A stretch of DNA of 64,000 nt from Scyliorhinus canicula (lineage: Eukaryota): assembly GCF_902713615.1 (NCBI RefSeq), contig NC_052164.1, positions 40,225,091 to 40,289,090 on the forward strand, in the 5' to 3' direction. The stretch's first letter is position 1. Each line of letters starts with the position of its first letter. Shown piece by piece: positions 9,028-36,076 of this stretch. A program made the translations under genes and the position numbers. The notes under the pieces were generated by a model. It saw only the letters and a program-made list of their open reading frames with translations, did not search any database and was not told the DNA's origin.

Positions 9028-9174
9028 TCTGAAGGGGAGGTTAACCTTTGTTACAGCCAAACCGTTCTAACCAACTGCCCCTTTATTGTGCCCTTGATGT
9101 GAATCCGTTCAACTTGAAGGAAATCATCTGCTTTTCCAAAATTGATATTAATAATATTGATCCATATTCTTGGA

Positions 9175-9340: not shown

Positions 9341-9448
9341 CACCGCTGATCGCCAGACCCTCCTCTTAACACGGAGAGCATGGCAGAGAGAGATCCTCCC
9401 AACACAGTCCAGATACACACACAGACACACAGAGGGACAGAGACACAC

Positions 9449-11162: not shown

Positions 11163-11385
11163 TGCAGCACGGTGGCACAGTGGTTAGCATTGCCTCAGGG
11201 TGCCGAGGTCCCAGGCTTGACCCCGGCTCTGGGTCATTGTCAGTGTGGAGTTTGCGCATTCTTTCCATGTTTGCGTGGATTTCGCTCCCACAATCCAAAG
11301 ATATGCAGGGTAGGTGATTTGCCGTGCTAAATTGCCACTTAATTCGAAAAAATGAATTGAGTACTCTAAATTTATTTTTTTTAAA
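11163..11385 (+). mobile_element. tRNA-derived SINE in B intron 2
   Basis: GCAGCACGGTGGCACAGTGGTTAGCATTG head and SINE core. A second fragment lies at about 10850-11050. Confidence 0.75.
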
Positions 11386-11449
11386 CTCATCATCTCTAAA
11401 TATTCCAACAACACAAACTCCCAGTCAGCCATCACCTCTGCATTCTCAG

Positions 11450-12381: not shown

Positions 12382-12869
12382 TGCATCATCTTTAATCTGA
12401 TTGTGTATATATTCCCTAGACACAGGACAGGATCCAGATTGTCCATCAGACCCTGCGTCACATCAGCAAGATCTACAGCATGAACCTGGGCTCAGTCACC
12501 AAGGACCGGAACAAGGTGGAAAACCTCCGCCTTCTCCTAGACCGACAGCTCAATGAGCTGGAAGAATGTGTCAGGAAACAGGGCTCAGAGGCCAGACTGA
12601 GGAAAAACTCCACAATTCAAAAATACTTCAGGAAACTGAGGAAGTTTCTCAAACAGAAGGTGGGACAATTGATAATTGACTGTGTGATTGTTGGATTGTA
12701 GTTTATTTGACCGTATTTAGATCTGTTCATTTCCAATTGGGTTTCCTTAAAATATATTCTGTTTTTCCAGACATTCAGCAACTGTGCTTGGGAAATAATC
12801 CGCGCTGAGACCAGGGCCCGTTTACAACAGCTCCTTTACTTAATGGCACAAATCCGCAGAAGAAATTGA

Positions 12870-14375
12870 AAAAAAATCCAATCGCATGTTCAGCAGAGAC
12901 TGGAATAATTTATTTAAATTGGCTGTTATTTATATAATAACAGAATTCTGTGGTGACTGACAAAGAGCAAAGAATATCTTGATGTAATTTTCTATTTGAT
13001 TTTTTATTCTAATTTATTAATATTTTTCGCTGCAATATTTTTATGTTGTGAAATCTTCATCATATGTGTGCTAAGCTAAATGGATGACATTTCATACAGA
13101 CTGAAACAAGAAATAGTTCTTTCAAAGGCTTCACGTTTTTGAGAAGTATTATATTTTATGTCGACAGTACGTCTGGATTACAATTCTGACAGCTTGGCTC
13201 GATGATAACACTGATTGGTGGGTCAAACCCCACTTAATTCTCACTGAGCTCCTTATTGTAGCTGCAGAACCTCCAATCACAATTCTGCACTGGGAATGGT
13301 CCAGCCAATCCTCAGCTCTGCTTTCCCGGTTTCCTCAGTCTCAAGGGTCGGTTGCAGACAAACGACCCCTGACCTCATTCCTGTTACAGACTCATCTTTA
13401 CTTTCTGTTCACCACAAGGTCAACATTTCAATTAATTCCTCCTCATTTTAATTTATTGATATTTATCATTGTGTTGGCTTTGTGTCATGGATTGCTTAAG
13501 TTTTGTACAATTTATGAAAAATAAATGTTAATTTATTGATTTTTATTAAATTTTGGGAAATAAATAATATTTTTTTATAAACCTGGCAACTTTTTATACT
13601 GAATGAAAGCATATTTGTTCAAATCAATTGTTTTTGATATCACGCATTTGCTGGAGTAATATTTATTTTTCATGGGTCTTCTCAGGGTTTCCTCAGTCTC
13701 AAGGGTGGGTTGCAGACAAACGACCCCTGACCCCATTCCTGTTTCAGATTCACCTTTACTTTCTGTTCACCACAAGGTCAACATTTCAATTAATTCCTCC
13801 TTTTCATAGAATTTACAGGGCAGAAGGAGGCCATTCAGCCCATTGAGTCTGCACCGGCTCTTGGAAAGAGCACCCTACCCAAGGTCAACAACGCCACCCT
13901 ATCCCCATAATCCAGTAACCCCACCCAACACTAAGGGCAATTTTTGGACACGAAGGACAATTTATCATGGCCAATCCACCTAACCTGTACATCTTTGGAC
14001 AGTGGGAGGAACCCGGAGCACCCGGAGGAAACCCACGCACACACGGGAGGATGTGCAGACTCCGCACAGACAGTGACCCAAGCCGGAATCGAACCTGGGA
14101 CACTGGAGCGGTGAAGCGATTGTGCTATCCACAATCCTCATTTTAATTTATTGATATTTATCATTGTGTTGGCTTTGTGTCATGGATTGCTAAAGTTTTG
14201 TACAATTTATGAGAAATAAATGTTAATTTATTGATTTTTATTAAATTTTGGGAAATAAATAATATTTTTTTATAAACCTGGCAACGTTTTATACTGAATG
14301 AAAGCATATTTGTTCAAATAAATTGTTTTTGATATCACGCACTTACTGGAGTAATATTTATTTTTCATGGGTCTT
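12870..14375 (+). promoter_or_regulatory. B-type 3' UTR region with AREs and a tandemly duplicated terminal block
   Basis: Many ATTTA. Block 13330-13680 is repeated at 13688-14373 with a SINE inside the second copy. AATAAA occurs in both copies. Confidence 0.65.
13806..14133 (-). mobile_element. HE1-like SINE
   Basis: Full tRNA head (GGTTCGATTCC on minus), core, and CTGTAAATTCTATG tail. Copies about 37090-37416 and 60563-60893. Confidence 0.8.
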
Positions 14376-14739
14376 CTTCACTATATATGTGTTATAATTG
14401 AACAAGTTAGCATTAGGATGGAAAAGGTATTAATGATTTTAGTGCACTGAAGAGTGGTGATTATCTGCTTTCACAGCTATCAAAGGAAGGAGAGGGTCTT
14501 GGAGTAGGTGAATATTGACTAGGATGGGCACACGGTGTGGATATATTGTTTACCTGGTGTGATTGTGGGTCACAATGGACTCGAAAGATTATTTTTTCAA
14601 CATGCTGGAGCTGGCAGAGGCCTTCACCAGAGAGAAGAAGCTGGGACTGGTCTGAGGAGCATGATTTGGGATTCTGCGATTGAAGGTGGATGATTTTACA
14701 GTGTATTTATGCCTTATTTTAGTATATTTCTTTCTCTTG

Positions 14740-15735
14740 GGGTTTGGGCTGTAAGAACGTGGGATTGACACATTTCTTGGCTCAGAGACAAGCTTGCTAA
14801 TAATGTTGGGTTTTGGGTTTTGGGAGTGCGTCAGAAGGGAGTGCGTGGTTGTTGCTTTTAGGGAAGTAATGCAGGGTGACGCTGGGAGGGGGTCACCTTG
14901 CTAGCGGAAGGAGACGGTGTGGCTAGTGAATGAGAGAGGAGTGGAGGAAGAGGCTGTTGGGCTAGATCATGTGAGGCACAATCAGTCGAGCTGTTTTACT
15001 GTTTGTCTGGTAGGGGCATGGGGCCTGGTATGGTGTTCCTACAAGAAACTCACCTGTGGGTGCCGGACCATCCAGGTTGGGGAAGCCCTGGGTGAGCCAG
15101 GTTTTCCACTCAGGGTTTGACGGATGGGTCGGGGGGAGAGTGGATTTCGGTCAGCAAAATGATTCGCTTTCAGTCGGGAACTCTGGCTGATCAGGGGATG
15201 GTTCTGTGATGGTTACAGGTATGCTGGGGGGGGGGGGGTCGCCATGGGCTGGTTTAGATCACTCGGCTAAATCGCTGGCTTTTAAAGCAGACCAAGCAGG
15301 CCAGCAGCACTGTTCGATTCCCATACCAGCCTCCCCGGACAGGCACTGGAATGTGGTGACTAGGGGCTTTTCACAGTAACGTCATTGAAGCCTACTCGTG
15401 GCAATAAGTGATTTTCATTTCATTTCATGGTGTGAGTGAATGTGTATGCCCCAAATTGGAGCAATGTCAAGTCTATGGGGTGCTTGCTGGCTGCAATACC
15501 GGGTGTTGGCTGCATTCATGGAGGAGACAACAGACAAACCCTTAGCATGGTTTAGTGACTTGATTGAGCTTTAGTATCTCAAGAAGTTCAAGCTTACAGT
15601 GAGGGGGTTGTTAGATGGGTTCCACCGTAGATGACGACTCTTCATATTGTTCTTTAAGGAATGGGTCACTGCTGGCTGTTATTGAGTTTAGGGGTGTGTG
15701 TTATTTGGGTTGTATTTCTGTTACTGGGGTTATTG
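14740..15735 (+). mobile_element. Internally deleted L1-like element (endonuclease remnants plus 3' end)
   Basis: FLQETH (TTCCTACAAGAAACTCAC, about 15036) and VNVYAPNW (about 15436). GDFN is retained in unit 3 (about 62365). Confidence 0.65.
15246..15427 (+). mobile_element. Same SINE family as 8851-9027, inserted in an L1 fragment and shared by all units (about 38600 and 62078)
   Basis: GGGCTGGTTTAGATCACTCGG...TTTTCATTTCATTTCA. Confidence 0.8.
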
Positions 15736-15736
15736 T

Positions 15737-15930
15737 TATGTGAAGGATGTGATTGCAGTAGAAAGAGTGCAGAGGAGATTCACCAGCATGTTGCCTGGAC
15801 AGGAGTTATGAAGCGAAGCTGGCCAGACTGGGGTTAGTTTCCTTCGAGCAGAGGAGGCAGAGTGGAACCTGATTGAGCTGTGTAAAATTATGTGGGACAC
15901 AGACAGGACAAATAGGAAGAAACGTTCCAA
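15737..15930 (+). mobile_element. CR1/HER1-like LINE fragment
   Basis: Encodes ERVQRRFTSMLPG, a typical CR1 ORF2 C-terminal motif. Confidence 0.6.
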
Positions 15931-16744
15931 AATATTATTGAAAGTATTGGTTTATTTCTTCTCTCTCTTCCGCCTCTGCTCGCTGAACTTGGATTCAAAC
16001 CATCTGGGCCCACTGCATTTTCTACTTCTAGACACATGCAAAATGTAATCCTTCACTTCCTCTATTCCATTGTTTCTCACTTCAGCCTTTCATTTGGTCG
16101 TTCTATTCTACAACTCGATGGCTCACCTTTCACTTTGCTCTGCAAAGCACTGAGCTATGAGTCTGATTGTTGCCGTTTGATCACACTCGAGTATAATTTG
16201 TCTTCATTCATCTACAAATGGTGCTAGTATTTTAGAGGATTATGTTTTACTTATTATTATCAAATATCCCCTGTCTTTGTCCTCATCCAATTAATAAATT
16301 ACCTTTGTTTTACATACAAGATGGAGAGACTTCAAAACTTTTTCTAAAGAATTTTTCTCCATATTCAAAATGTTTTTTTGGAATTATAGAGTAAGTAGTC
16401 CTGTCTTGGATTCAGAGGTTGGAGGGTTCAAATGCACTTGAGAGTCATGGTTCAGACATGACCCCTGGCTCTGAATTATGGGTTGTCATCCAACCACACA
16501 TTTGTGCCCAATGATCAAGATTCTCAGCTCCCCATTGTATTATCTGGACGATTGCATAAAATCTCACTGATTTACAGGATCCTTTCAAATCAGCCTCTCA
16601 ACTCAGATAAAGATGGTCATGGCCAAGAAAATAATGTACAAGTATGAATGGTTAATTTGCTTGTGACTCCTTCCTTTACTCCGCAGGGGGAGAATATGAG
16701 GTTTTGTGTCAACTAGATTAATGTCAGGTTGTCCTTCTGTTTTT

Positions 16745-17256
16745 TAAAATAAATTTAGAGCACACAATTCATTTTTCCAATTGAGGGGCAATTTTGCGTG
16801 GCCAATCCACCTACCCTGCACATCTTTTGGGTTGTGGGTGCAACCCACGCAAACACGGGGAGAACGAGCAAACACCACATGGACAGTGACCCAGAGCTGG
16901 GACCACGGTGGCGTGCGCCCGCAGTACTAACCACTGCGCCACCATGCTATGCTATCCATCTGTTTTTTTAATTAACAATCTTTATTGTCACAAGTAGGCT
17001 TACATTAATATTGCAATCAAGTCGCTGTGCAGATCCCCTCGTCTCCACTTACCGGCGCCTTTTCAGGTACACGGAGGGAAAATTCAGAACGTCCAAATTA
17101 CCTAACAGCACGTCTTTCGGAACTTGTGGAAGGAAGCCGGAGCACGCAGAGGGAACCCACGCAGACACTGGGAGAACAGACTGTGCACAGACAGTGATCC
17201 AAGCTGGGAATCGAACGTGGGACCTGTCGCTGTGAAAGGAGAGTGCTAACCACTGT
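16745..17256 (-). mobile_element. Two adjacent minus-strand SINEs (about 16745-16946 and 16978-17256)
   Basis: Each ends on + with TAACCACTG (reverse of the A-box region) and has the shared SINE core. Confidence 0.7.
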
Positions 17257-17554
17257 TGGTTTTATATTGTTGTCTGTACATTTACATACTTCAAACAGAA
17301 TACTAATGAAACGTTTAACCCAGGTGCCCTTATATTTGAGATGAACAAAGGACAAACACAAGTGCACACTTAAATCCAAGTTTATTTTCAATCATAATAA
17401 AACAGTTATCCCTTAAATTACCCCAGCTATAGTATGGCTTAATACAACATGAGCCGGGGGCAGCAGAGTCTTGCAGTGTTTGGCAATGCTGCCTCAGGGC
17501 CCCGGGTCACTGCCCTTGTGGAGTTTACACATTCTCCCCATGTCTGTGTGGGTT

Positions 17555-18660
17555 AGAAATGGATAGAACCCAGAGATCCTTGTGAAGCTAGATTTGGCGC
17601 TCTTGGTGGACAAGGCATTTTGCAAGAAGGTGCGCATGGTGAGAGAGAACTGTGTGGAGTCCAAACAAAAGGGGAGGTCTCGCTCTGCATGTTTCGGGAG
17701 GCATTGAAGGAAGTGGTCTGGCAGCAGTAATACCCTATATGGTCCACAGGGACAAGGTTAAGAGCGCAGAGAGACAGAGGTTGGTGGGTGACATTGTGGA
17801 TGTGGACTGACTGCATTCAGTGGCTCTGACAAGAGAGTTGTTAGCAGAGAGGAAGAACTACAAGTAGCGTTTGATCTATTAATGTCATTCATCGCTCAAC
17901 AGGGTTATTTTATGAGTATGGGGAGTAGGCCAGCAACCTGCTAACCCATCAGTTGAGGTCATAGGCGGCCATGTGGGACATAATGCAGGTGATGGATGAG
18001 GAAGGAGGTTTAGCGACGACACCGGAGAAAACTAATGAAGCATTCAAGGTCTTTTACCCGGGGCTGTATTTGTCCGGGCCCCGAGGGGAGGACGCAGAGC
18101 TGCTGCACTTTTATATTCCCGGAGGTGGAAAGGGGGAAGGGACAGGGTTTGGAGGCATCACTGGGACTGCCGGAGATAATGGAGTCCGTTGGGTTGATGC
18201 CGTCGGTGAAGGCACCAGGGCTGGATGGCTTTCCGGTTGAGTTTTATAAAACAGTTTTGGCTGCGTTGGCACCCATCTCTAGCGAAAGTATAAAGATTCG
18301 CTGGCACGGGGGCAAGCTGCCCACTAGGCTGGCTCAGGCATCAATCTCACTGATCCCAATGAAGAAAAGGGACAAAGTGGAGTGTGGGTCTTACAGGGCC
18401 ATCTCCCTGCTAAACACTGGTGTGACATTGTCGGCTGTGGTTCTCTTCTCAAGCATTTGCTTGTCACCAGTGGATGGGGCGGGTGGCGGGGGGTTTCTGG
18501 AATGGGAGCAGTGGGAGGGGTGATGCAAGGGGGGTTGATTTGGGGAAATGGCTGTGTTAGTCAAGGGGAAAATGGACAAATGACAACCTGTTTGTAATTT
18601 GGTTGTATCTTCGGCTGACTCTGTGATTTGTTGATGGTAGAAATAAAATATATATATTTT
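17555..18660 (+). mobile_element. Decayed L1-like ORF2 internal fragment
   Basis: KAPGLDGFPVEFYK and SYRAISLLNT motifs in ORF 18035-18523. Copy at about 41025-42130. Confidence 0.75.
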
Positions 18661-18721
18661 AAAATACTCACTAACACTTCTTCAACAGCAGCAGCCAAAC
18701 CCACCACCTCTGTGACTAGTG

Positions 18722-19057
18722 TGGCATGGTGGCACAATGGTTAGCACTGCTGCCTCATAGCTCCAGGGTCCCAGGTTCAATTCCAGCCTCGGATGACTGT
18801 CTATGTGGATTTTCTACTTTCTCCCTGTGTCTGTGTGGGTTTCCTCTGCGTGCTAGGGTTTCCTCCCACAGTCCAAAGATGTGTGGGTTAGGTGGATTGG
18901 ACCTGCTAAATTGCCCCGAGTGTCTAAAAGGTTAGGTGGGGTTCCTGGGTTACGAGGATGGGGTGGAGTCATTGGCTTAATTAGGGTGCTCTTTCCAAGG
19001 GCCGGTACAGACTCAGTGGGCCAAATGGCTTCCTTCTGCACTGTAAATTCTATGATT
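18722..19057 (+). mobile_element. HE1-like SINE, full length
   Basis: GGCATGGTGGCACAATGGTTAGCACTGCTG head, GGTTCAATTCC B box, CTTCTGCACTGTAAATTCTATGA tail. Confidence 0.8.
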
Positions 19058-20031
19058 TTATTGTTCTCGAAGATGAAGGGTAGTAGATATATGTGAACCT
19101 GAACTTGCCCTTCAATCTCACATTCAGACTTGGAAATATATCAACTTCCCCTGACTGTCACTGGATAGAAATTCTGGAAATCCCTTCCCAACACGTCTGT
19201 CAGTTTAGCGAGACCACATGGACTGCAGGGGTTCAAGAAAGTGGCTCAGACCTGCTTCTGAAGGGCAATTCGAGGGGAGAAACATACCTTGGCCTTGCCA
19301 GCAATGTTCACATATCAGCTACAATGTTCTCGAATGGTGGGGTAGAATTGCGAGGCCGTGTGGCTGATCATGCTCCTGATTTATTTGTTGTGGTGTTTGT
19401 CTGTTCATGATCACAATGCTGGTTGTTGGTGAGTGAAGCTCAAATTGGCTAACATGTTACCTACATTACTACAGTGACAATACCTCAAAGGTACTTGATC
19501 AGCTGTCAACTACTTTGTGATATTCTGTGGTCAAGAAGGTCGCTACATGAATGTAAGTCTGTTTTCAAATCAAAGACATATTGAAAACAGGCTCCACACA
19601 CAAAACTGACCTCAGCTCAGGATCAATGGATCATCACTGACATTTTTTACAGGCCTTTCAGGAGGCTTCAAAAACTACATTTGACAATTTGGGTGTGGGG
19701 ACAGTAATACTTTCACAAATTAACTTTTTAATTTGGAAACATAAAGAATATTAAACCCCAGTGTCACCAGAGATTGAGCCAGTATTATTTTCAGTGATGT
19801 TCAATTGGGTTTCTAACAGAGGATAAATCGATACTGTAAACATGCTTAAATATATGCATCAATATTTTGAGATCTTTTCAAAAATTCAATTTTACAATTC
19901 AGTCTGATTGTGCTGGTTCATGGCAGATGTGACGTTTGGTGATTGGCAATGAATTGCAGTGGCAAATCTTTCAGACGGTTGGTGCAGATTCGATGGGCCG
20001 AATGGCTGCCTTCTGCACTCTCAGGATTCTA

Positions 20032-20566
20032 TGATGTGGAGATGCTGGCGTTGGACTGGGTGGGCACAGTAAGAAGTCCAACAAGTTTGTTTCAAATCAC
20101 TAGCTTTCATACCTCTTAATTCACCGGATGAAGGAGCAGTGCTCCGAAAGCTAGTGTTTGAAACAAACATGTTGGACTTTAACCTGGTGTTTTAAGACTT
20201 CTTACTGTGCTCACCGCAGTCCAACGCACGGCATCTCCACATCATGACTAGCTTTTGGTGCATTCCTCCTTCCTCAGGTGAATGGAGAGGTAGGTTCCAG
20301 AAACATTTATACAGAAAAAGTCAAAGATGCAAGATGATACTTTGAATGCGGGTAAATAAGTCTTCACAGAGCCAGAGAGAGGGGTAACCCCAGGTAAAAG
20401 AGGTGTGAATTGTCTCAAGCCAGGACAGTTGGTAGGATTTCGCAAGCCCAGGCCAGATGGTGGTGGTGGGGGGGGGGGGGGGTTGAATGTAATGCGACAT
20501 GAATCCCAGGTCCCGGAACTTGGCTATATGTTTCTGCTCTGCAATTCCGCGTTGTTGCGCGTCCTG
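20032..20566 (-). mobile_element. Truncated Penelope-like element with inverted terminal segment (copy about 43500-44030)
   Basis: Minus strand encodes QDAQQRGIAEQKHIAKFRDLGFMSHYI, resembling a GIY-YIG C-terminus. 20032-20080 is inverted against 20196-20245. Absent at the paralogous site about 4905. Confidence 0.75.
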
Positions 20567-20639
20567 TGAATTAGAGATGAGAAACCTTGGCCTTGCCCGC
20601 GACCCTCACATCCCATCAATGAATTAAAAAAGTCAAATT

Positions 20640-22195
20640 TTGCAGAGAAATGTGTGAATGAGCATGCGATTTTTATTTGGTGAAGGTGGAAAAGCTGATT
20701 TCAATCCGAGTTCCAGCTGAGAGGGATTGGGTGACATTCCCTGTGGAAGCTGGGATATCCCGAATATCCGGAACCCTTTCCCATTTCCCCCTCAGGCCTC
20801 TCAGTGGCGAGCGGCTCGCTTCACAAACTCTCCTCCCTCTCGGAAATGACAAAACGCCTTCTCTTTCCCTGAGGCACTTTCGCTTTTGGAACAAACTGAC
20901 AACAAGGTTCATTTCCAGAGAGAAAGTGAGGCAGCCGCTTTCCCGGGAGACAGAGAGAGAGACAAGAAAGAAACGGGGTGAAAGGAGAGGGAGCGGAATC
21001 ACTTTCACCCTCGGAATCGGAGCAGATGAAATATTCTTTCAGTCAAACTCTTGAAAACGGCTCCAGAAAGCAGCGGGAAATGAGCAAGTTGTGCCAGTGA
21101 AAGAGCAGATTGTGGGACAGCTCAATGGGAGCGGAGTCAGTGTCCATGAAGCGGGGAGCCTGGGCTCTGAGCCGGGCTCTCTGCAATGTTCAAGCTGTGA
21201 AGGGTGGAGAGAACAAGCGCGATGTGAACACACCGGGTCCCGGTGCATTTCAGAGGCAATGGGGCCCCGGGTCAGCTCGAGAAGCCGCCGCACCGGATTC
21301 CCGCTCTCGGTGTCGCTGTAATCCGGATGATCAAATCCAGCCCCCAATACATGTTCCCCCTGCACCCCCCCCCAGCAATACTGAGCCTCCCTCTACACCA
21401 CCAAACTGCCCCCCCCCCAAAAACTGACCCTCCCTCTGCACCTCCTTACTGCCCCCCAATACTGAGCCACCCTCTACACCACCATACTGCCCCCCGAATA
21501 CTCTGCCCCCCTCTACACCAAATTACTGCCCCCACAATACTGAGTCCTACTCTGCACCACCGTACTGCCCCCCCCCCAATACTGAGCCTCCCTCTACACC
21601 ACCCTACTGCCGCCCCCAAATACAGAGTCCCCCTCTACACCACCTTACTGCCCCACAATACTGAGCCTCCCTCTACACCACCTTACTGCCGCCCCCCAAT
21701 ACTGAGCCTCCCTCTACACCACCTTACTGCCCCCAATATTGACCCTCCCTCTAATCCACCATACTGCCCCCCGGGTGATGAGAAGCTTCACAACACTGAG
21801 CTGGAAGCCAGCGCTGCTTGGGATTTTCTCGCAGGGATTCCCCACTCACTGCTTCCGGAGTCTCCAGCTTTCAGCTTCCTGACCTCAAAGAGAAACCGCA
21901 CAAACTATTGATCTCCTGCAGCTCGAACACAAATCCTCCAGCCCATTTTCACTTTACCAATGTCATGTCCACACCTTAAAGGCGACAGCATGTCAGAGCC
22001 AGTGCCAGCTCCCAACAGAGTCCACACTCACACTCACTCCATTCGCTAACAGAGGCGTTCGCTCCCGGATCAGAATCGGCTCCCATTCGACTTTCCCACT
22101 TTCATTCGCTTCACAAGAACCTTTCTCGCCGCTGAACCACGAAGCCGCCGCTTACTCATCTTTTACATCGGTGTGTGACTCTGGCTCGGTTGCTC
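20640..22195 (+). promoter_or_regulatory. A2 IFN upstream region with NF-kB and IRF/ISRE-like motifs (copy upstream of A3 at about 44100-45658)
   Basis: kB-type GGGATATCCC 20752-20761 and GGGATTCCCC 21834-21843. IRF-type CACTTTCGCTTTT about 20875, GCTTTCAGCTTCC 21867-21879, TTTTCACTTT 21946-21955 and ACTTTCCCACTTTCATT 22090-22106. TATA-like TTAAA 21976-21980. Confidence 0.7.
21377..21772. repeat. Same minisatellite, 10 more degenerate copies
   Basis: Units counted directly. Confidence 0.92.
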
Positions 22196-24330
22196 ATGGC
22201 TCTGGCGAGTATTTGGAGGATTGGGGCGGTGTTGTTCCTCTTGTCCGGGACCCTCAGTCTGGGCTGTGAGAGGCTGCAGTTACAGCAAGTTCTTAACACA
22301 GAGACACTCAGCAAACTGAATGAAATGGTGAGTTGAAGCTGGTTTCTGAGCAGCCTGTGAATCACATTGGGTCTAATTGCTGTGAAATGTTATTTCTGGA
22401 GAAATAGTTTGGGGTTTTTAATGAGATTTTAATTTACTCCTCTCAGGGTGGTTCCTTTCCCAGACACTGTATAAAACACAGGCACGCGCTGAAAACCAAG
22501 CCCTTGAACCTGGTGAAACTTTCGAAGGGATTAGAGGTGAGTGTGACAATGGTAGCAGCTTCTGTCGTTACATTTCACTCTGTAGTTAGAGCAACAACCT
22601 GATCGGAACCGGGAACATCAGGAATTTTCAATTGAGAGATTTGCACCCATTGTGATAATGATAGCAGCTTCTGTCGTTATATTTCATTCTGTATCTCACC
22701 CATGAACTGTGTCACTCTCTCTTCCCGCATTCACTATCTCACTATCTCTAACCCCAGAAAATATGCCCCTGTCTCTCATCAACTCTTCATTGCAAATTAC
22801 TTTCTTGTTGCAACTATCGGATTGCTTGAACTATCTTAATCTCCCAATGTCACTGTTTCTGAGCCTGTCATTCCTCTGATCAACAATTTCCTCCCGCAAA
22901 ATATAATTATACTTAAAATCTGTGGACATATTTTCCAGAGTATTTCCACTTCAGATTGACATTAAGTGCAATCTTACGTGTACAATGCAATTATAATATT
23001 CCTAATGTTAACGGAGCACATCTCGTGTCAGATATATAGCTTCAGTGCAAAACCATTCATGATTATTGCTGATAGATAAGATAGACAAGGAAAAACTTCC
23101 CATTAGTTCATGGTACAAGGTCCAGGAGACACATATTTAATATCCACTTAAGGACATCATCCCCAAAGCCACTTTTACCAAACCAGTTGGAGTCAGGGAA
23201 TTCAGAAATTGGACATCCACAAAACAATCTTGTCAGGTTTGTTTCCTGGTTGTTATTATTCGCGCGCGATCTCTGACGTTTCTTGCGGTCTTGGGCCGAG
23301 CAGTTGCCATACCAGGCTGTGATGCAGCCAGATATGATGCTTTCTATGGTGCACCTGTAAAAGTTGGTAAGTCATTGTGGACATTCCGAATTTAGGTTCC
23401 TGAGGAAGTATAGGCTTCGGTGGGTGGGTTAAAGTGGGTGGACCTGGACAGATTTTTGGTGATGTGCACACCTAGGAATTTGAAGCTGTCAACCATCTCC
23501 ACCTCAGCTCCGTTGATGCAAACAGGGGTCTGTATAAGACTTTGCTTCCTAAAGTCAATGACCGGCTCTTTTATTTTGCTGGCATTGCGGCAGAGATTGT
23601 TGTTGTTACAGCACTCCACTGGATTTTCTATCTCCCTTCTGTATTCTGACTCACTGTTGTTCCAGATCCGACCCACTGTAGTCGTGTCGTCAGCAACACT
23701 GTAGATGGCGGTGGAGCCGCATTTTGCCACAATCCTATGTGTATAGGGAATATAGTAGGGGGCAAAGTACGGAGTATTGCGTATTTGAGCATTTTAAGTT
23801 TGATTTATTTTTGTTCTTCGAAATAATTTATTCGAATTCTAAAGGTAACAGGTCTCTCTAATATCGTTTTGTATTCTGTACAGAAAGAGGATCAGATCCA
23901 GATTCTCCATCAGACCCTGCGTCACATCAGCAAGATCTACAGCATGAACCTGGGCTCAGTCACCTGGGACCGGGACACGGTGGAAAACCTCCGCCTTCTC
24001 CTGGACCGACAGCTCAGTGAGCTGGAAGAATGTGTCAGGAATCAGGGATCAGAGCACAAGATGAGGAGAAACTCCACCATTCATAATTACTTTAGGAAAC
24101 TGGAGAAGTTTCTCAATCAGGAGGTGGGACAATTGACAATTGACTGTGTGATTACTGGCTGGTCGATCATTTCACCCGATCAACATTAATTTATTTTCTA
24201 ATACACTTTCCTGAATAATTTTCTTTTTCAGAAATTCAGTGACTGTGCCTGGGAAATAATCCGCACTGACACCAGGGCCCGATTACAACAGATGCTTTTC
24301 ATAATGCTGCAAATCAGCAGAAGAAACTGA
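22196..24330 (+). CDS. Type I interferon A2, intact 4-exon gene, 186 aa
   Basis: Exons 22196-22327, 22447-22536, 23884-24123, 24232-24330, all GT-AG phase 0. Signal peptide MALASIWRIGAVLFLLSGTLSLG, then CERLQ...FPRHC...LEECV...CAWEIIR...SRRN*. Four Cys, one per exon. Confidence 0.93.
23258..23780 (-). mobile_element. Rex1/Babar-like LINE reverse transcriptase fragment in A2 intron 2 (copy about 46720-47243)
   Basis: ADDTTTVG...ESEYRREI...NNNL...KIKEPVIDFRK...VDSFKFLGVHI in ORF 23392-23730. Confidence 0.75.
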
Positions 24331-25465
24331 TAAATACATTGGTCCAGAATGGGAACAAAGAATGTTTATTTTGAAGACTTTTCATGTGCAGCTATATTTT
24401 ATATGGATATTTGAAATTCATTTTATACTTTATTGTAATGATGAGAGAATAATGAGTGACTTGATGAAATTGTTCACTGTCTTTATTTATTTAATTTATT
24501 GATACCTACAGCCGCGTTATTGTGGGTGGTGAGTCTGGTTTGAGAATTGTCTGTCAGGCTTTCAGGATATGGGTTTCCAGACCTTTCCTAAATGGACAAC
24601 ATTTCAAACTATATCAGGCTCTTTAATTGATTGATATTTATTTTCATGATGTTTTTGTAGAATGAAATGTTAGAATTTTATTTAATGTGTAAAATGAGTT
24701 AAAAATGTTAATTTATTGATATTTATTAAGAATTGGGTTGTAGAAAATGTTTATCTAAACTGGAAAATTTTATACTGAATGAGAGCATGTATTTATATAT
24801 TTAATATTTATAATAAATCGTTTTTAATATTACACATTTCTAAAGTTATGTTCATTTTTGATTTCTGTCGGTTTGATTTCCACATTACAAATGGTCTGAA
24901 TTCTCCTATCTGCTGCCTGTTACTGTTGCTCATTCTCTGCTCCATTTTCCATTCTCTCCATCCTCTGATTTTCCCTCACCTGGCGGAATTGTAAATTCAT
25001 TTTGAACTCAACTTGCCCAGGTTCTTATATTTTCTAAACTTCTGCACCTCAACAATATAGTATCATGGAATCCCTACAGTGCAGGAGGAGGCCATTCAAC
25101 CTATCGGGTCTGTCCCGACCCTCTGAAAGAGCATCTTGACGAGGCTCACTGCCCTCACCTATCCCTGTATCCCCGTAACCCTACTTAACCTGCACATCTT
25201 TGGACATTGAGGGAAAATTTTAACAGAGCCAATCTACCCAACTTGCATGTTTTTTGACTGTGGGAGGAAACCAGAGGAAACCGAGGCAGACAGGGAGAGA
25301 ACATGCAAACTCCACACAGACAGTCACCCAAGGCTGAAATTGAAGCAGTGTCATGTGTGCCGCGATACAGTAGCATTAACCACTGTGCCACCATGCCATC
25401 CTTTGATGAAATTCTGGCACTGAGGCTGAGAGGACTTGGTATGACATCCAGAATAAGAAAGTGAA

Positions 25466-26807
25466 CTGGGCGGCTAACATAGCCATGATAAGGAAGTTGA
25501 TGGTGGGCACGGGGTCTATCTGGGAGCGGGTGGAGGCAGCTTTGTGCAGGGGCACCAGTTTGGCAGTCCTGGTCATGGCTCCTCTACCGCTGTCGCCGGC
25601 CAAGTACTCCACCAGCATGGTAGTGGGGGCGGCCCTGCGGATATGGGGCCAGTGGACGAGGCATGTAGGGGAGGTAGGTGCGTCGGTCTGGGCTCCTATA
25701 TGTGATATTGATTTGCCCCGGGAACATGGATGGAGGTTTTCGAACATGGGGTTGGGCGTTGGGAGGAGTGTGGGCGATATGTTCCTGGAGGGGAGCTTTG
25801 CGAGTTTGAGGGGCTTGGAAGAGAAATTTGAGCTGGCAAGGGTAAATGACTTTAGGTACTTACAGATGCAGGACTTTGTCCGCAGACAGGTCCCATCCTT
25901 CCCACGCCTCCCGCCAACGGGGATTCAGGACAGAATAATCTTTTGGGGAGAAGGAGTCTCGGATATTTACACGGTGCTCATGAAGGGGGAAGAGTCCCAG
26001 ACGGAGGAACTGAAACTCAAATGGGAGGCGGAGCTGGGTGGGGAGATGGAGGACAGGCTGTGGGCTGAAGCACTGAGTAGGGTAAACTCAACCGCAACAT
26101 GTGCCAGGCTCGGCCTGATTCAATTTAAGGTCGCACACCGTCCCACATGATGATATCTCAGATGAGCAAATTATTTGGGGTAGAGGACAAGTGCGCTAGA
26201 TGCGCGGGAGGACCAGCGAACCATGTTCACATGTTTTGGGCATGTCCTAAGCTTAGGGGGTACTGGGAGGAGTTTGCGGGGATCATGTCCCGGGTGCTTA
26301 AAACAAGGGTGGTGATGAGTCCAGTGGTGGCAATGTTTGGGGTTTCGGAAGACCTGGGAGTGCAGGGGAGGAAGGAAGCTGATGTTTTGGCCTTTGCTTC
26401 CCTCGTACCCCGGCGGCACATACTGCTGGCATGGAGGGTCTCAAAACCCCCGAAGACTGAACTATGGCTTTCAGACATGGCTAGTTTTCTGGGTATGGAA
26501 AAAATTAAGTTTGCCTTGAGGGTATCTGTACTGGGGTCTGCCCGAAGTTGGCAACCATTCATCGACTTCTTGACGGGAGAGTGAATGTCAGCAGGGGGTG
26601 GGTGGGGGGGGGGGATTAGAGTAGAGTAGTGGCGATAAATAGGCAGGCACTGTCTATGGGAGAGGAGCGGGCCTGTGCAGTATGGGTCGATTGAGGCGTT
26701 GATTTTACGTTGGTTTTTGCATATTTTTGTTTTTTTTTACTGTTTGATATCTGTAACTTTTTACAATGCCGAAAAGTACCTCAATAAAATTGTTTGTTTA
26801 AAAGAAA
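25466..26807 (+). mobile_element. Same L1/Tx1-clade insertion, unit 2
   Basis: ORFs 25461-26150 and 26147-26584; same TSD. Confidence 0.88.
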
Positions 26808-29054
26808 AGAATAAGAAAGCGAAAGATGAAGGCATTAATTCAGAAGGGACAGGGAGAAATGGGATTGAGTTTGGAGATGTTGCAGTGTTGAGGTGACAAT
26901 TTTGCGATCTAATGATGCAGAAGTTCAGGCTTATGCTCAGAGGATGTTGGTGAAAATTACACACTTTGATGGGATTTGAATTTAGTTAATCAATCGCAGT
27001 AATAGTAAGCACGATATTGTACAAAACACTTTCCTGATGCACTCATGTCTGTTCGGGAAGGAAATTGATGCCCCATCCCCGCTCTGGCCTACATGTGGCT
27101 ACAACAATGTTATTGCCTCTTCACAGCCCTCTGATGTGGCCTAGGAGCCATGAACCTCAAGGGCAATTAGGCATGGGCAACAAATGCTGGCCTGACTGGT
27201 GATATGGAATTGATACGATAGAATTTTGAATACTGACTGTATGACATCAGAACACAAGGAGGAGCAGACCAATTCTGTTCCACCATTCAATTTTGTCTTA
27301 AGTGATCTGATTGTGGCCTTATCCCATTTCCTACTTACCCCCATCACTTTTACTCATTTGTTGATCAGACAACTGTCCAAATCGGGCTTGGATGTATTCA
27401 ATGATCCTGGCTCTGTGCAGGTTGCAGAATGTGAAAGATTAATGGCACTTGGAGCAATCAGAGTTTACAATCAGATCGGAGAGGATGTTATCGAATGGTG
27501 GGATAGGATGGTGAGGACGAGTGGCCTATGATGCTCCTAATTTATATGTTGGGGTGTTTTTCTGTTCATGATCACAACACTGGTTGTTGATAGGTGAAGC
27601 ACAAATTGGCAAACGTGTTTCATATATTACGACAGTCACAATGCCTCAAATGTACTACATCAGCAGTCGTGTACTTTGTGATGTTCTGTTGTCAGGAAGG
27701 GCGCTACATAAATGTAATTCTGTTTTCAAATCAAACACATATTGAAAACTGTCCCCACACAAAAAACCCACCTCAGCTCAGGATCAATGGATCATCGCTG
27801 AAATTGTTTACAGGCCTTCGATAGGCTCCAAAAACTAGTTTTGACAATTTGGGTCTGAGGACAGATTTAGTTTCTGAAATTAACTTTTGAATTTGAAAAC
27901 AGAAAGACAATTACACCCCAGTGTCACCAGACATTGAGCCTGTATTATTTTCAGTAATGTTGAATCAGGTTTCCAACAGAGGTAAAATCGATACTGGCAT
28001 TAAAGTGCTTCTGCGTTTAAATAAAATTGCGCGTGGCAACAACCTTAAATACATGCATCAATATTCTCAGATATTTTCAAAAATTCAATGTTAATATGCA
28101 GTCTGATTTTGCTGGTTCATGGCAGATGTGGCGTTTGGTGATTGGCAATTATTTGGAGTGGAAAATCTTTCAGAGGGTCGGTGCAGATTGGATGGGCTGA
28201 ATGGCTGCCTTCTGCACTGTAGGGATTGTATGATTTTATGAATTAGAGATGAGAAGCACACAGTGACCTTGCCAGCGAACCTCACATCCCATCAATGAGT
28301 AAAATAAGTCAAATTTGGCACAGATTTCAGTGAGTGGACCTGAGATTTTATTTGGTAACGGTGGACATGGTGATTTCTATCCGAGTTCCAGCTGTGAGGG
28401 ATTGGGTGACATTCCCTGTGGAAGCTGGGATATCCCGAATATCCGGAACCCTTTCCCATTTCCCCCTCAGGCCTTTCAGTGACGAGCCGCTCGCTTCACA
28501 AACTCTCCTCCCTCTCGGAAATGACAAAACGCCCTCACTTTCCCTGAGGCACTTTCGCTTTTGGAACAAACTGACAACAAGGTTCATTTCCAGAGAGAAA
28601 CTGAGGCGGCCGCTTTCCCGGGAGAGAGAGAGAGAGAGAGAAGAAAGAAACGGGGTGAAAGGAGAGGGAAAGGAATCACTTTCACCCTCGGAATCGGAGC
28701 AGATGAAATATTCTTTCAGTCAAACTATTGAAAACGGCTCCAGAAAAGCAGCGGGAAATGAGCAAGTTGTGCCAGTGAAAGAGCAGATTGTGGGACAGCT
28801 CAATGGGAGCGGAGTCAGTGTCCATGAAGCGGGGAGCCTGGGCTCTGAGCCGGGCTCTCTGCAATGTTCAAGCTGTGAAGTGTGGAGAGGACAAGCGCGA
28901 TGTGAACACACCGGGTCCCGGTGCATTTCAGAGGCAATGGGGCCCCGGGTCAGCTCGGAAAGCCGCCGCACCGGATTCCCGCTCTCGGTGTCTCTATAAT
29001 CCGGATGATCAAATCCAGACCCCAATACATGTTCCCCCTGCAAACCCACCCCCC

Positions 29055-29485
29055 AATACTGAGCCTCCCTCTACACCACCTTATTGCCCCCCCCCAATAA
29101 TAAGCCTCCCTCTACACCACCTAACTGCCCCCCCAACACTGAGCCTCCCTCTACACCACCTTATTGCCCCCCCCCCAATACTAAGCCTCCCTCTACACCA
29201 CCTAACTGCCCCCCCAACACTGAGCCTCCCTCTACACCCCCTTACTGCCCCCCAATACAGAGCCTCCCTCTACACCACCTTACTGCCCCCAATACTGAGC
29301 CTACCTCTACACCACCTTACTGCCCCCCCCCACCAATACTGAGCCTCCCTCTACACCTTACTGCCCCCCCCCAATACTGAGCCTCCCCCTTCACCACCTT
29401 TCTGCCGCAAATACTGAGCCTCCCTCTACACCCCCTTACTGCCCCCCCAATACAGAGCCTCCCTCTCCACCACCTTACTGCCCCC
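29055..29485. repeat. Same minisatellite, 11 copies
   Basis: Units counted directly. Confidence 0.92.
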
Positions 29486-29897
29486 GGGTGATGTGAAGCT
29501 TCACAACACTGAGCTGGAAGCCAGCGCTGTTTAGTATTTTCTCGCAGGGATTTCCCTCTCGCTGCTTCCGGAGTCTCCAGTTTTCAGCTTCCTGACCTCA
29601 GAGAGAAACCGCACAAACTATTGATCTCCTGCAGCTCGAGCACAAATCCTCCAGCCCATTTTCACTTTTCCAATGTCATGTCCACACGTTAAAGGCGACA
29701 CCAGTGCCAGCTCCCAGCAGAGTCCACACTCACACTCACTCCATTCGGCAACACAGGCGCTCGCTCCCGGATCACAAGCGGTTCCCATTCGACTTTCCCA
29801 CTTTCATTCGCTTCACAAGAACCCTTCTCGCCGCTGAACCACGAAGCCGCCGCTTTCTCATCTTTCACATCGGTGTGTGACTCTGGCTCGGTTGCTC

Positions 29898-30029
29898 ATG
29901 GCTCTGGCGAGTATTTGGAGGTTTGGGACGGTGTTGCTCCTCTTGTCCGCGACCCTCAGTCTGGGCTGTGAGAGGCTGCAGTTACAGCAAGTTCTCAACA
30001 CAGAGACACTCAGCAAACTGAATGAAATG
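29898..30029 (+). other. Orphan IFN exon 1 (unit 2), open frame and intact donor; candidate alternative first exon of B2
   Basis: MALASIWRFGTVLLLLSATLSLGCERLQLQQVLNTETLSKLNEM|GTGAGT. No exons 2-4 of its own seen. Confidence 0.8.
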
Positions 30030-31024
30030 GTGAGTTGAACCTACAGCCAGAGCCGGAGTCGAATCAAACAGCGTCTGTATGTTTACAAAGTCATATCAGG
30101 AGAGGAAGAGAAATGTGTGAAAAAACACATCAGGTCTGAGCGGTGAATAGAAGCTGGACACTGAGGCGAGGAGGATTTACAGAAAGGAGGGATTGTTATC
30201 TGGGGGCGGGGGTGAAAGAGGATTCAGAAACAAGCCATTCACATCAAGAATCTGTGTTTAATGTAACCAAACAATCACAGTGTTATCAGGAACACAGTAA
30301 AGTAAATTTGACATCAAGTTACGTAAGAAGGTAAAAGAACAGATGGCTAAAAGCTGGTAAAAGAGGGAACTTTTCAGGAAGGTCTTGCCGTAGGAAGGGG
30401 AGGTGGAGAAATGCGGAAGTTTACGGAGGGAATTCCTAATTTTAACGCTGAGATAGCTGAAGACTGCGCCTCAAAAATGAACATTGGAATCCAGGAGGCC
30501 AGATCTGGAGGTGGACAGATATGTCAGAGTGTTTTCGAGACTGGAGATGATTACACACACAACAGAAGACTTAAAAACAAGTAGGAGAATTTAAAGATGA
30601 AGGCATTGCTTAACTCGGCGTCATAAATCAGCAAATTCAGGTACGATGAGAGAACAAGATTCATGATTTATGCCAAAATCCATCTCAGACATAAATTACT
30701 ACAGGTTTTGATTGGGGAGAATGTGGAAAGTCGATCAGGCAGGTGTAGGAGTGACCAAACGCGGAGGTAACAAAGCTATGGATGGAAATTTCAGCTTCAG
30801 AGTTGCTCAGCCAGAGAGGGGGACAAGTGTGATTGGGGGGGGGGGGGGGGGGGGGGGTGGGCAGTCTTACTTGTGGCGTCGATGTGGTCAGAAACTAATT
30901 TCAGGGTCAAATATCACACCTGCACATCTTGGGACTGTGATGTGGAGATTTCGGCGTTGGACTGGGGTGAGCACAGTAAGAAGTCTTACAACACCAGGTT
31001 AAAGTCCAACAGGTTTGTTTCAAA

Positions 31025-31059
31025 CACGAGCTTTCGGAGCGCAGCTCCTTCTTCAGGTG
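31025..31059 (-). ncRNA. Minimal type I hammerhead ribozyme motif, Penelope-associated (copies 54490-54524 and, with a stem II mismatch, 7673-7707)
   Basis: Minus strand: CAC-CUGAAGA-A-GGAGC(UGC)GCUCC-GAA-AGCU-C^GUG. Conserved core, stem II hairpin, palindromic AGCU stem III, stem I CAC:GUG. Confidence 0.6.
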
Positions 31060-33005
31060 ACCTGGTGTTGTAAGACGTCTTACTGTGCATCGTGGGACTG
31101 TGAGAGGAAACCGGAGCACCGGGAGGAAACCCAAGCAGACACGGGGAGAACGTGCAGACTCCGCACAATCACCAGAGGCTGGAATTGAACCTGGGTGTGA
31201 GGCAGCAGTGTTAATTACTGTGCCAGGTGCTGCCTCTATGATCTGCTGGTAACTTTAACCTCACTTTTCCTCTCTGTCCAAAGTAGCACAGTGGTGCAAA
31301 GGTCAGCACTGCTGCCTCAGGGCACCGAGGACCCGGGTTCGATACCGGCTCTGGGTCACTGTCTGTGTGGAGTTTGCATATTCTCCCCGTGTCTGCATGG
31401 GTCTCATCTCCACAACCAAAAGATGTGCTGGTTAGTTGGATTGGTCACACTAAATTGCCCCTTAATTGAAAAAAAGTAATTGGTACTCTATAGTTCTAAA
31501 AAAAACTTTTCCTGTCTGTCCCTCTCCCCCGGGACACACTTTTAGATTCCCCTTGAATATCTGCAATGACCGAGGGGATTGCTTTACTGAGGAAGCGAAT
31601 TCTAAAGATTAATGAGCCACTGAGACAAACAAATTCCTCCTTACTTCCATCATAAATGGGGAGTCTTTATTTTTAAACTGTGCACCTTAGTTCTAGAATC
31701 CTCTGGAAGAGGATGCCCTCCTGTCAGCTTGTATCCAGCCAACCCCCCTCAGATTCTGAGACGTTTCAATATTCGAATTAGTTTGATCAGCACACCGGTG
31801 TTTTGAGATGATGTCATTGAGAGGTAGCATGCAGCTGAGAAATGGGAGAGGTCAAGGATTGATTCTTAGGGGACACCAGAGGTAATGCAGCCGTCCTTCA
31901 GCAGGAAGAGAAGCCACTGCAGGAAATTCTCTGCCTACGTTGAGATAGATGATAAAAGCAAACGAGGACAGCCCCCTTCCAGCCCCATCCACCCAGCCTA
32001 AAACTTGACCATTGTGCAGAGGCCTGACCGACCCGTGTCAAGGTGCAGACATGATATGGAGATGCTGGCGTTGGACTGGGCTGAGCACAGTGAAAAGTCT
32101 CAACTGAGGAAGGAGCAGTGCTCCGAAAACTAGTGTTTGAAGCAAACATGTTGGACTTATCCTGGTGTTGTAAGACTTCTTAAGGTGCAGACATATAGAG
32201 AAGGATCTGAAGGGGAGGTTAACCTTTGTTACAGCCAAACCGTTCTAACCAACTGCCCCCTTATTGTGCCCTTGATGTGAATCCGTTCAACTTGAAGGAA
32301 ATCATCTGCTTTTCCAAAATTGATATTAATAATATTGATCCATATTCTTGGAGCTTTGAGTTAGAACCGGCCGCTGTTTGTGTTTTTCTATTTGGGCTCT
32401 TCCCGGCCCTGGTTGAGGAATTTCCAGCTTTCAGATTCCTTCCCTCACACTGGGAGCAGACTAACTATTCGCCTTGTAAAAGAAACAACCGAAAGCAGAT
32501 TTCACTTTCCCAACGTAACACCGCTGATCGCCAGACCCTCCTCTTAACACGGAGAGGATGCTAGAGAGAGATCCTCCCAACACAGNNNNNNNNNNNNNNN
32601 NNNNNNNNNNNNNNNNNNNNNNNNNNNNNNNNNNNNNNNNNNNNNNNNNNNNNNNNNNNNNNNNNNNNNNNNNNNNNNNNNNNNNNNNNNNNNNNNNNNN
32701 NNNNNNNNNNNNNNNNNNNNNNNNNNNNNNNNNNNNNNNNNNNNNNNNNNNNNNNNNNNNNNNNNNNNNNNNNNNNNNNNNNNNNNNNNNNNNNNNNNNN
32801 NNNNNNNNNNNNNNNNNNNNNNNNNNNNNNNNNNNNNNNNNNNNNNNGACTCGCAGGAGAGTTTAGGCGGTTACTCCTGCTGCAAGCGGTTGCATTTTCA
32901 CTCCCGGTGATTCTTTCGGTGAAAATACAACATTTGTCGGAGTTGAACCCGGTTACGGTCAGTGTGTGATCCTCAGCTCCGTGTCTCACTCTGGCTCGGT
33001 TGCTC

Positions 33006-36000: not shown

Positions 36001-36076
36001 AATAATCCGCGCTGAGACCAGGGCCCGTTTACAACAGCTCCTTTACTTAATGGCACAAGTCCGCAGAAGAAATTGA
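33006..36076 (+). CDS. Type I interferon B2; frameshifts probably assembly errors (otherwise a pseudogene)
   Basis: Exons 33006-33136 (131 nt, ATGCT instead of ATGGCT), 33311-33400, 35626-35865 (compensating -1/+1 indels), 35978-36076. Otherwise matches B3 and lies in an indel-dense stretch. Confidence 0.7.

What the first reader, a model, noticed from the sequence alone, without database searches (positions are those of the whole stretch)
23884..24030. Duplication breakpoint inside exon 3 implies A2/A3 (or A1) are hybrid interferon genes
Seen: from mid exon 3 onward A1 and A2 are nearly identical through intron 3, exon 4, the UTR and flank. The exon 3 5' half differs (TQDR vs KEDQ, WAQD vs WDRD, SEME vs SELE). 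The intron 2 3' end is only loosely similar, and further upstream A1 has an old SINE where A2 has a Rex1-like fragment. Inference: unequal crossing-over between two paralogues within exon 3 created the 23-kb duplication and a chimeric IFN.
Basis: partly seen in the sequence, partly recalled or inferred. Interest (0 to 1): 0.7.

Follow-up and report, generated by a model that had tools for sequence, protein, structure and literature searches.

The report
Chimeric interferon genes at duplication junction
In the small-spotted catshark, a 23-kb block carrying two interferon genes was copied in tandem by a crossover between two older interferon genes inside their third exon, so every internal copy is an intact hybrid gene; this is a clean new example of a well-known mechanism.

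Summary
The window (Scyliorhinus canicula) has about 2.7 tandem units of 23.3-23.5 kb, each with an A-type and a B-type type I interferon gene.

A1 and A2/A3 compare as follows:
- Upstream of 475/23790 they share no homology.
- They differ at 16/93 bases in the last 93 bases of intron 2.
- They differ at 9/139 bases in the first 139 bases of exon 3.
- They differ at only 3/309 bases from there to the stop codon, and stay about 98% alike through the rest of the unit.

By public gene models the array runs A0, A1-B1, A2-B2 ... A7-B7, A8. A8 (XP_038634705) has the A2-type 5' part (1/121 residues differ) but another 3' part (5/65). A1 is the mirror image (12/121 and 1/65). Both switches fall between codons 121 and 127, which is 24022-24042 in A2.

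The sister species S. torazame has the order X, B (three copies), Y, with no hybrid A genes annotated near the B copies. So A2-A7 are most likely Y-5'/X-3' chimeras of the "anti-Lepore" kind, made by unequal crossing-over and then amplified.

Caveats:
- DNA outside the window could not be fetched.
- A5 carries an A1-like exon 2, which points to further exchange.
- Expression of the hybrids is not shown.

The scan did not find this before on other DNA.

The parts
1..474 (+). A1 intron 2, X-type. It has no detectable homology to A2/A3 intron 2 or to anything else in the window. A1 exons 1-2 lie about 3.1 kb upstream of the window start.
   Evidence: A1 gene span 4116 bp
475..568 (+). Tail of A1 intron 2. 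This is old-paralogue-level similarity (about 83%) to A2 23790-23883.
   Evidence: Contigs of two DNA samples carry 400-609.
569..707 (+). A1 exon 3, 5' part (X-specific: TQDR, AQ, M). It differs from A2 at 9/139 bases.
708..727 (+). Interval in A1 that corresponds to the junction (after the M121 codon's first base, up to the N127 codon). From here on A1 is unit sequence.
708..1015 (+). A1 exon 3 3' part (to 808), intron 3 (809-916), exon 4 and stop (917-1015). It differs from A2 at 3/309 bases.
22196..24330 (+). A2, an intact hybrid interferon gene (186 aa, equal to P0029 / XP_038634691). Exons 22196-22327, 22447-22536, 23884-24123, 24232-24330. All introns are GT-AG.
23250..23789 (-). LINE-like fragment in A2 intron 2 (ORF 23392-23730 on the minus strand). 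Homology to A1 begins right after its edge at 23790. The lower edge at about 23250 was set by eye, not measured.
   Evidence: no Pfam hit
23884..24022 (+). A2 exon 3, 5' part, of Y origin (KEDQ, DR, L).
24023..24042 (+). Best estimate of the duplication junction in A2. It lies between the last site where A1 differs (24022, L/M codon 121) and the first site where A8 differs (N/K codon 127, 24040-24042).
45659..47793 (+). A3, the second hybrid gene, with exons identical to A2 (45659-45790, 45909-45998, 47347-47586, 47695-47793). Its junction interval is 47486-47505.
12420..12872 (+). B1 exon 3, intron 3 and exon 4. This is the B-type paralogue inside unit 1, used as outgroup. B2 is at 35626-36079 and B3 at 59099-59552.
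708..64000 (+). Tandem array of junction-to-junction units: about 708-24022, 24023-47485, and 47486 to beyond the window end. The period is 23315 and then 23463 bases.

Best explanation
The stretch marks the junction of a tandem duplication made by unequal (non-allelic homologous) crossing-over between two older A-type interferon paralogues. These lay about 23 kb apart in the same orientation with a B-type gene between them. The ancestral order was X - B - Y.

The exchange fell in exon 3, between codons 121 and 127. It produced X - B - (Y5'/X3') - B - Y. Later in-register exchanges between the 23-kb units raised the number of units to seven.

In today's assembly A1 is X, A8 is Y, and A2-A7 are the chimeras. 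A2 and A3 are in this window. The chimeras are intact four-exon genes of 186 codons.

Shown:
- The step in identity at the DNA level.
- The unit structure in the window.
- The reciprocal protein mosaic.
- The gene order.

Inferred:
- That one crossover, not several events, made the pattern.
- That the sister species keeps the ancestral layout.
- That the chimeras are functional.
For: 1. DNA step between A1 and A2: no homology, then 17%, then 6.5%, then at most 1-2% divergence. After that, identity runs the length of the unit at about 97-98%.

2. A1 exons 1-2 (from XP_038634689) differ from A2 at 9/74 residues. The A1 gene spans 4116 bp against 2135 bp for A2. So the whole 5' part differs, not just a patch.

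3. Reciprocal mosaic. A1 against the internal genes: 12/121 residues 5' and 1/65 residues 3'. A8 against the internal genes: 1/121 and 5/65. Fisher p = 0.003. No site conflicts with this partition.

4. The internal genes combine two derived states. KEDQ is otherwise only in A8. N127 is otherwise only in A1. All four combinations exist, so recombination is required.

5. Ends of the array:
- A8 is preceded by a B gene at 9.1 kb, like every internal A gene.
- No B gene is called within 10 kb downstream of A8; instead an inverted partial gene lies 6.9 kb downstream.
- A1 is preceded by A0 at 7.5 kb with no B gene between them.

6. S. torazame. P0004 is followed by a B-type gene. There are three B copies. 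Then come P0026 and the inverted P0028. No A gene is called within 10 kb of two of the B copies. P0004 shares P47/S138/T139 with A1. P0026 shares S47/K127/A138/A139 with A8.

7. Segment trees are incongruent in the expected direction.

8. The A1-specific intron tail plus exon 3 start occurs in contigs of two different DNA samples.
Against: - DNA of A8, A4-A7 and A1 exons 1-2 could not be fetched, so the far side of the argument is protein-level only. It rests on few sites, and tree supports are 81-92%.
- On DNA alone a two-rate model places the step at 579 rather than about 707.
- A5 (XP_038634698) has an A1-like exon 2 (P47, Y57, S58, A67) and an A1-like gene length (4097 bp). X-type sequence therefore also sits inside the array, and at least one further exchange is needed.
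- Gene order beyond the window comes from accession numbering. It was checked only through the product lengths of neighbouring genes.
- No contig bridges 622-658 in either DNA sample.
Confidence: 0.7

Rival explanations
1. Gene-conversion mosaic. The array arose with its unit borders in intergenic DNA. The exon 3 switches in A1 and A8 are ends of conversion tracts from other paralogues, not the duplication junction.
For: - The family clearly exchanges patches. A5 carries an A1-type exon 2 inside an otherwise internal-type gene.
- The 5' half of exon 3 is unusually alike even between A and B (7-11% divergence, against 16-17% in the 3' half).
Against: - No donor exists for A1's 5' part. A0 lacks V48, Y57, A67, A103, Q104 and M121.
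- The difference between A1 and A2 is not a patch. It runs from exon 3 upstream through a non-homologous intron to exons 1-2, and the gene lengths differ.
- The X-derived side continues for the whole 23 kb.
- A8's 3' half matches its syntenic S. torazame counterpart, so it looks original rather than converted.
Confidence: 0.17
2. Two independent deletion-type (Lepore-like) crossovers at the two ends of a pre-existing array made A1 and A8 the hybrids. On this reading the internal genes are the original type.
For: Exon 3 is the best-conserved block between paralogues. Separate crossovers could therefore fall in the same exon by preference.
Against: - It needs two events where one suffices.
- Both halves of A1 agree with one S. 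torazame gene (P0004). Both halves of A8 agree with another (P0026).
- The internal combination KEDQ + N127 is absent from S. torazame.
Confidence: 0.07
3. Assembly artefact. Near-identical 23-kb units were mis-joined or over-copied, and A1 is a false join of two loci.
For: - A2 and A3 with about 14 kb around them differ almost only by one-base indels.
- N runs sit at the same place in every unit.
- No Logan contig covers 622-658.
Against: - The A1-specific sequence 400-609 is present in contigs of two different samples.
- Unit 1 differs from units 2 and 3 by 2-3% throughout, so it is a separate copy.
- Distinct protein variants exist for A4, A5, A6/7 and A8.
Confidence: 0.04

Closest known systems
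Haemoglobin anti-Lepore type fusion genes, and likewise hybrids in opsin, GYPA/GYPB, CYP2D6/2D7 and RCCX arrays (from general knowledge)
   Same: - Unequal crossing-over between two tandem paralogues in direct orientation.
- The duplication product carries an in-frame chimeric gene: the 5' part from the distal parent and the 3' part from the proximal one.
- The chimera is flanked by both intact parents.
- The junction is seamless, inside shared coding sequence.
   Different: - Here the chimera was afterwards amplified to six copies, and it is fixed in the reference assembly rather than being a rare variant.
- The unit also carries a second gene (B).
- The parents are interferon genes of a shark.
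Type I interferon gene clusters of vertebrates (Pfam PF00143), which grow by tandem duplication and gene conversion
   Same: - A multigene, same-strand cluster of alpha/beta-type interferon genes with lineage-specific expansion.
- There are signs of exchange between paralogues.
   Different: - These are intron-bearing genes (four coding exons).
- The expansion unit and its junction can be pinned to about 20 bases inside an exon.
- The only catshark interferon paper found (PMC6640115) does not mention exons, and its one mention of gene conversion was not read; I took it to be transcriptome-based and saw no description of this array.

Membership tests
Type I interferon (Pfam PF00143) | Significant match to the Interferon alpha/beta domain | tested here: met
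   A2 exon 3 alone scores E = 1.4e-12, 48.5 bits, against a cut-off of 26.8. All gene models carry PF00143.
Type I interferon (Pfam PF00143) | Intact secreted protein: start codon, hydrophobic leader, open frame, conserved cysteines | tested here: met
   The spliced A2 translation equals the 186-aa model P0029 and all introns are GT-AG. C24, C124 and C159 are invariant and C52 nearly so in 30 shark sequences. Cleavage of the leader was not tested.
Type I interferon (Pfam PF00143) | Five-helix cytokine fold | tested here: inconclusive
   The AlphaFold2 model has mean pLDDT 47. It is helical throughout but too uncertain to use.
Tandem duplication by unequal crossing-over with a chimeric junction gene | Internal genes share their 3' part and downstream flank with the proximal parent | tested here: met
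   At the DNA level in the window, A1 against A2 is 98-99% identical from about 708 onward, and about 97-98% through the whole unit.
Tandem duplication by unequal crossing-over with a chimeric junction gene | Internal genes share their 5' part and upstream flank with the distal parent | tested here: met
   Protein level only. A8 against A6/7 differs at 1/121 residues 5' and 5/65 residues 3'. A B gene ends 9.1 kb upstream of A8, as in the units.
Tandem duplication by unequal crossing-over with a chimeric junction gene | Both switches fall at the same position | tested here: met
   The last A1-specific site is codon 121. The first A8-specific 3' site is codon 127. Resolution is limited by the few informative sites.
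Tandem duplication by unequal crossing-over with a chimeric junction gene | A related genome keeps the layout without hybrid genes | tested here: inconclusive
   S. torazame has P0004, then three B copies, then P0026 and the inverted P0028. No A gene is called within 10 kb of two of the B copies. The order rests on accession numbers and neighbour data, with no DNA. B is itself triplicated there.
Short-tract gene conversion | A bounded patch flanked on both sides by the recipient's own sequence | tested here: not met
   For A1 against A2 the divergence does not end upstream. The intron is non-homologous to the window start, and exons 1-2 differ at 9/74 residues. A conversion-like patch is seen for A5 exon 2.

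The most novel reading that the evidence does not exclude
The chimera is not a neutral by-product. Joining the Y-type front (helices A-C, with the derived KEDQ patch) to the X-type back (helices D-E, with derived N127) may have made an interferon with new receptor-binding or signalling properties. Its rise to six copies in S. canicula alone would then reflect selection for dose of this new subtype. The helix assignment comes from a poor model (pLDDT 47).
Probability: 0.15. Interest if true: 0.6.

Novelty: new member of a known kind. Interest (0 to 1): 0.42.

Why it matters
This is a dated, base-level example of how an antiviral cytokine family grows in a cartilaginous fish. One exchange inside an exon both started a 23-kb array and created a new in-frame interferon subtype. 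That subtype then became the most numerous A-type gene of the species.

It also has a practical consequence. Gene trees of catshark interferons built on whole coding sequences will be misleading, because the two halves of A2-A7 have different histories. Paralogue-specific expression work must use markers on both sides of codons 121-127.

The mechanism itself is textbook, so the surprise is modest.

Tried and rejected
- **Fetching DNA outside the window.** Ten encoding-contig look-ups gave gene positions but no DNA ('file too large'). The DNA of A8, A5 and A1 exons 1-2, and all S. torazame DNA, was therefore never compared.
- **Two-rate change-point on DNA.** It is significant, but it places the step at 579. 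Intron and exon evolve at different rates, so it does not fix the mid-exon position.
- **Read laying.** Only fragmentary contigs were laid. None bridges 622-658.
- **RNA evidence.** One contig of a run guessed to be RNA (X18) joins exon 3 to exon 4. It carries G at 955 and other differences, so it comes from a non-hybrid paralogue. Run X13 (kind unknown) holds 77% of the sampled words of A2 exon 3, and its contigs stop at exon ends. This hints at expression of the hybrid type but does not show it.
- **AlphaFold2 with 30 sequences.** Mean pLDDT was 47. The model was not used for any structural claim and no fold search was run.
- **TE labels.** Rfam and ARAGORN on 1-600/2600 found nothing. Pfam on the LINE-like ORF found nothing. 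The labels stay unverified.
- **A local burst of protein change in A1.** Rejected, because the intron tail is even more diverged (17%) and exons 1-2 and the gene length also differ.
- **B as donor of the A2 5' half of exon 3.** Rejected, because KEDQ is absent from B, and B differs from A2 at 10-12 of 139 sites.

Full report
**What is in the window**

Protein searches name the genome as Scyliorhinus canicula, on a 106.7-Mb chromosome. Self-BLAST and a three-way alignment show about 2.7 tandem units of 23.3-23.5 kb. Each unit carries an A-type and a B-type type I interferon gene on the plus strand.

A2 has four coding exons: 22196-22327, 22447-22536, 23884-24123 and 24232-24330. All its introns are GT-AG. 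Its translation equals the public model P0029 (XP_038634691/693). A3 has identical exons. Of A1 only the end of intron 2, exon 3 (569-808), intron 3 and exon 4 (917-1015) lie in the window. Its model P0001 (XP_038634689) spans 4116 bp, so its start codon lies about 3.1 kb before the window.

**The observation**

A1 and A2 do not align upstream of 475/23790. A sensitive BLAST of 1-474 finds nothing else in the window. From there on:

| Segment (A1 coordinates) | A1 vs A2 |
|---|---|
| Intron 2 tail, 475-568 | 16 mismatches (about 17%) |
| Exon 3, 569-707 | 9/139 |
| Exon 3, 708-808 | 1/101 |
| Intron 3 | 0/108 |
| Exon 4 | 2/99 |
| 1016-2000 | 98.5% identical |

The step is significant. The maximum chi-square permutation test gives p = 0.0002, and the exon-only Fisher test gives p = 0.002. 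On DNA alone the best single change-point is 579 (support 572-675), because the intron tail is the most diverged segment. So the mid-exon position needs other evidence.

With B as outgroup, six of the nine exon differences are derived in A1 (595, 643, 654, 657, 664, 707). Three are derived in A2 (570, 572, 579, which together give KEDQ).

**The rest of the array**

Public models and their neighbours give this order:

| Gene | Accession (XP_038634...) | Gene span |
|---|---|---|
| A0 | 687 | 3416 bp |
| A1 | 689 | 4116 bp |
| B1 | 690 | |
| A2 | 691 | 2135 bp |
| B2 | 692 | |
| A3 | 693 | |
| B3 | 694 | |
| A4 | 695 | 1909 bp |
| B4 | 697 | |
| A5 | 698 | 4097 bp |
| B5 | 699 | |
| A6 | 700 | 1910 bp |
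| B6 | 701 | |
| A7 | 702 | 2133 bp |
| B7 | 703 | |
| A8 | 705 | 2734 bp |

The order follows accession numbers. I checked it against the product lengths of the neighbouring genes in every look-up.

A0 ends 7.5 kb before A1, with no B gene between them. Every internal A gene, and A8 too, has a B gene ending 9.1-9.6 kb upstream. A8 is followed by no B gene within 10 kb. Instead an inverted partial A-type gene (P0008) lies 6.9 kb downstream. An earlier scan note places interferon-cluster sequence 81 kb beyond the window end, which fits this extent.

**The reciprocal mosaic**

All A proteins are 186 residues long and align without gaps. I split them after residue 121.

- A1 differs from the common internal type (A6/7) at 12/121 residues 5' and 1/65 residues 3'.
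- A8 differs at 1/121 residues 5' and 5/65 residues 3' (K127, A138, A139, R149, E167).
- The 2x2 test of these counts gives p = 0.003.
- No variable site contradicts the partition.

KEDQ is a derived state found only in A2-A8. N127 is a derived state found only in A1-A7. The internal genes carry both, and all four combinations occur in the family, so recombination is required.

The last A1-specific site is the first base of codon 121 (24022 in A2). The first A8-specific 3' site is codon 127 (24040-24042).

Trees of the two segments are incongruent as expected, with moderate support from very few sites. In the 5' segment A8 groups with A2-A7 (81/92). In the 3' segment A1 groups with A2-A7 (86/83).

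**The sister species**

In S. torazame, P0004 (XP_072342347) is followed 7.0 kb downstream by the B-type P0012. P0012 exists in three identical-protein copies (344-346). No other gene is called within 10 kb of two of them. P0028 (342) faces a convergent 186-aa gene 6.4 kb downstream, taken from the accession order to be P0026 (343).

Read in gene orientation, this gives X - B, B, B - Y - inverted gene. That is the layout predicted for the ancestor, with its own separate B triplication. P0004 shares P47, S138 and T139 with A1. P0026 shares S47, K127, A138 and A139 with A8. No S. torazame model retrieved here has KEDQ or N127. This makes A1 and A8 the parental types and A2-A7 the hybrids.

**Mechanism**

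The simplest account is one unequal crossover between Y on one chromatid and X on the other, inside the conserved exon 3. It gave X - B - (Y5'/X3') - B - Y. In-register exchanges between the now 23-kb repeats followed.

The units differ in age. Unit 1 is 2-3% from units 2 and 3. About 14 kb around A2 and A3 (19360 to about 33300, against 42826 to about 56780) differs almost only by single-base indels. The exchange is inferred, not observed. Conversion-only and two-deletion scenarios remain possible, but each needs more events or a donor that is missing.

**Complications**

- A5 equals the internal type except for exon 2, which is A1-like (P47, Y57, S58, A67). Its gene length is also like A1's. 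An X-type patch has therefore been copied into the array at least once.
- The far side of the argument is protein-level, because no DNA outside the window could be fetched.
- Independent contigs confirm the A1-specific 400-609 in two samples, but nothing bridges 622-658.
- Expression of the hybrids is only hinted at.
- The structure model was too poor to say which receptor-contact surfaces were recombined.

**Comparison with what is known, and novelty**

The pattern matches the classic anti-Lepore type of chimeric gene at a duplication junction. It also matches the way interferon clusters are known to grow. The catshark interferon paper found is transcriptome-based as far as I read it. Its passages shown do not describe the locus, and a second search found nothing on it. 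I rate this a new member of a known kind, of moderate interest.

Noticed in passing
window 565: The window reads T here. Contigs from both DNA samples laid (X1 and X5) read A, which is also the A2/A3 letter. This is either an assembly base error or a polymorphism. If it is an error, the intron-tail mismatch count drops from 16 to 15.
   Followed up: no
window 35690 and 35729 (B2 exon 3): Relative to B3, B2 lacks one base near 35690 and has one extra C at 35729. This shifts 13 codons (WVQSPGTGTRWKT), and the shifted frame is kept in the public model XP_038634692. It is either a pair of long-read indel errors or a damaged gene.
   Followed up: partly
window 9449-9630, 32586-32847, 56052-56313: N runs sit at the same relative place in all three units. 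They are 182, 262 and 262 letters long.
   Followed up: no
window 19360-33300 against 42826-56780: A block of about 14 kb centred on A2/A3 is identical between neighbouring units apart from a few substitutions and many one-base indels. This points to a very recent duplication or homogenisation, offset from the junction phase. The indels look like long-read errors.
   Followed up: partly
window 5722-6191, 21367-21772, 29049-29485 (and the copies in later units): A C-rich minisatellite of 38-39 bases (10-12 copies) occurs twice per unit, each time inside a 1.2-kb block that is about 90% alike (4911-6111 against 20567-21772). The A2-side array ends about 420 bases before the A2 start codon. The other block probably precedes the spare first exon upstream of B noted earlier by the scan; I did not locate that exon.
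   Followed up: no
outside the window: A5 = XP_038634698 (P0024): This is an internal array gene with an A1-type exon 2 and an A1-like gene length (4097 against 4116 bp). It has internal-type exons 3-4, and its exon 1 matches the internal type (F14) where A1 has a private L14. It looks like a conversion patch of 2 kb or more from A1.
   Followed up: partly
S. torazame, XP_072342344-346 (P0012): There are three B-type genes with identical proteins and nearly identical spans (6141-6147 bp). No other gene is called within 10 kb of two of them. This is an independent recent triplication of B in the sister species.
   Followed up: no
window 569-707 against 12420-12558 and 59099-59237: The 5' half of exon 3 is much closer between A and B (7-11% divergence) than the 3' half (16-17%), intron 3 (27%) or exon 4 (14-17%). 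The cause is either strong constraint or old A/B homogenisation of this half-exon.
   Followed up: partly
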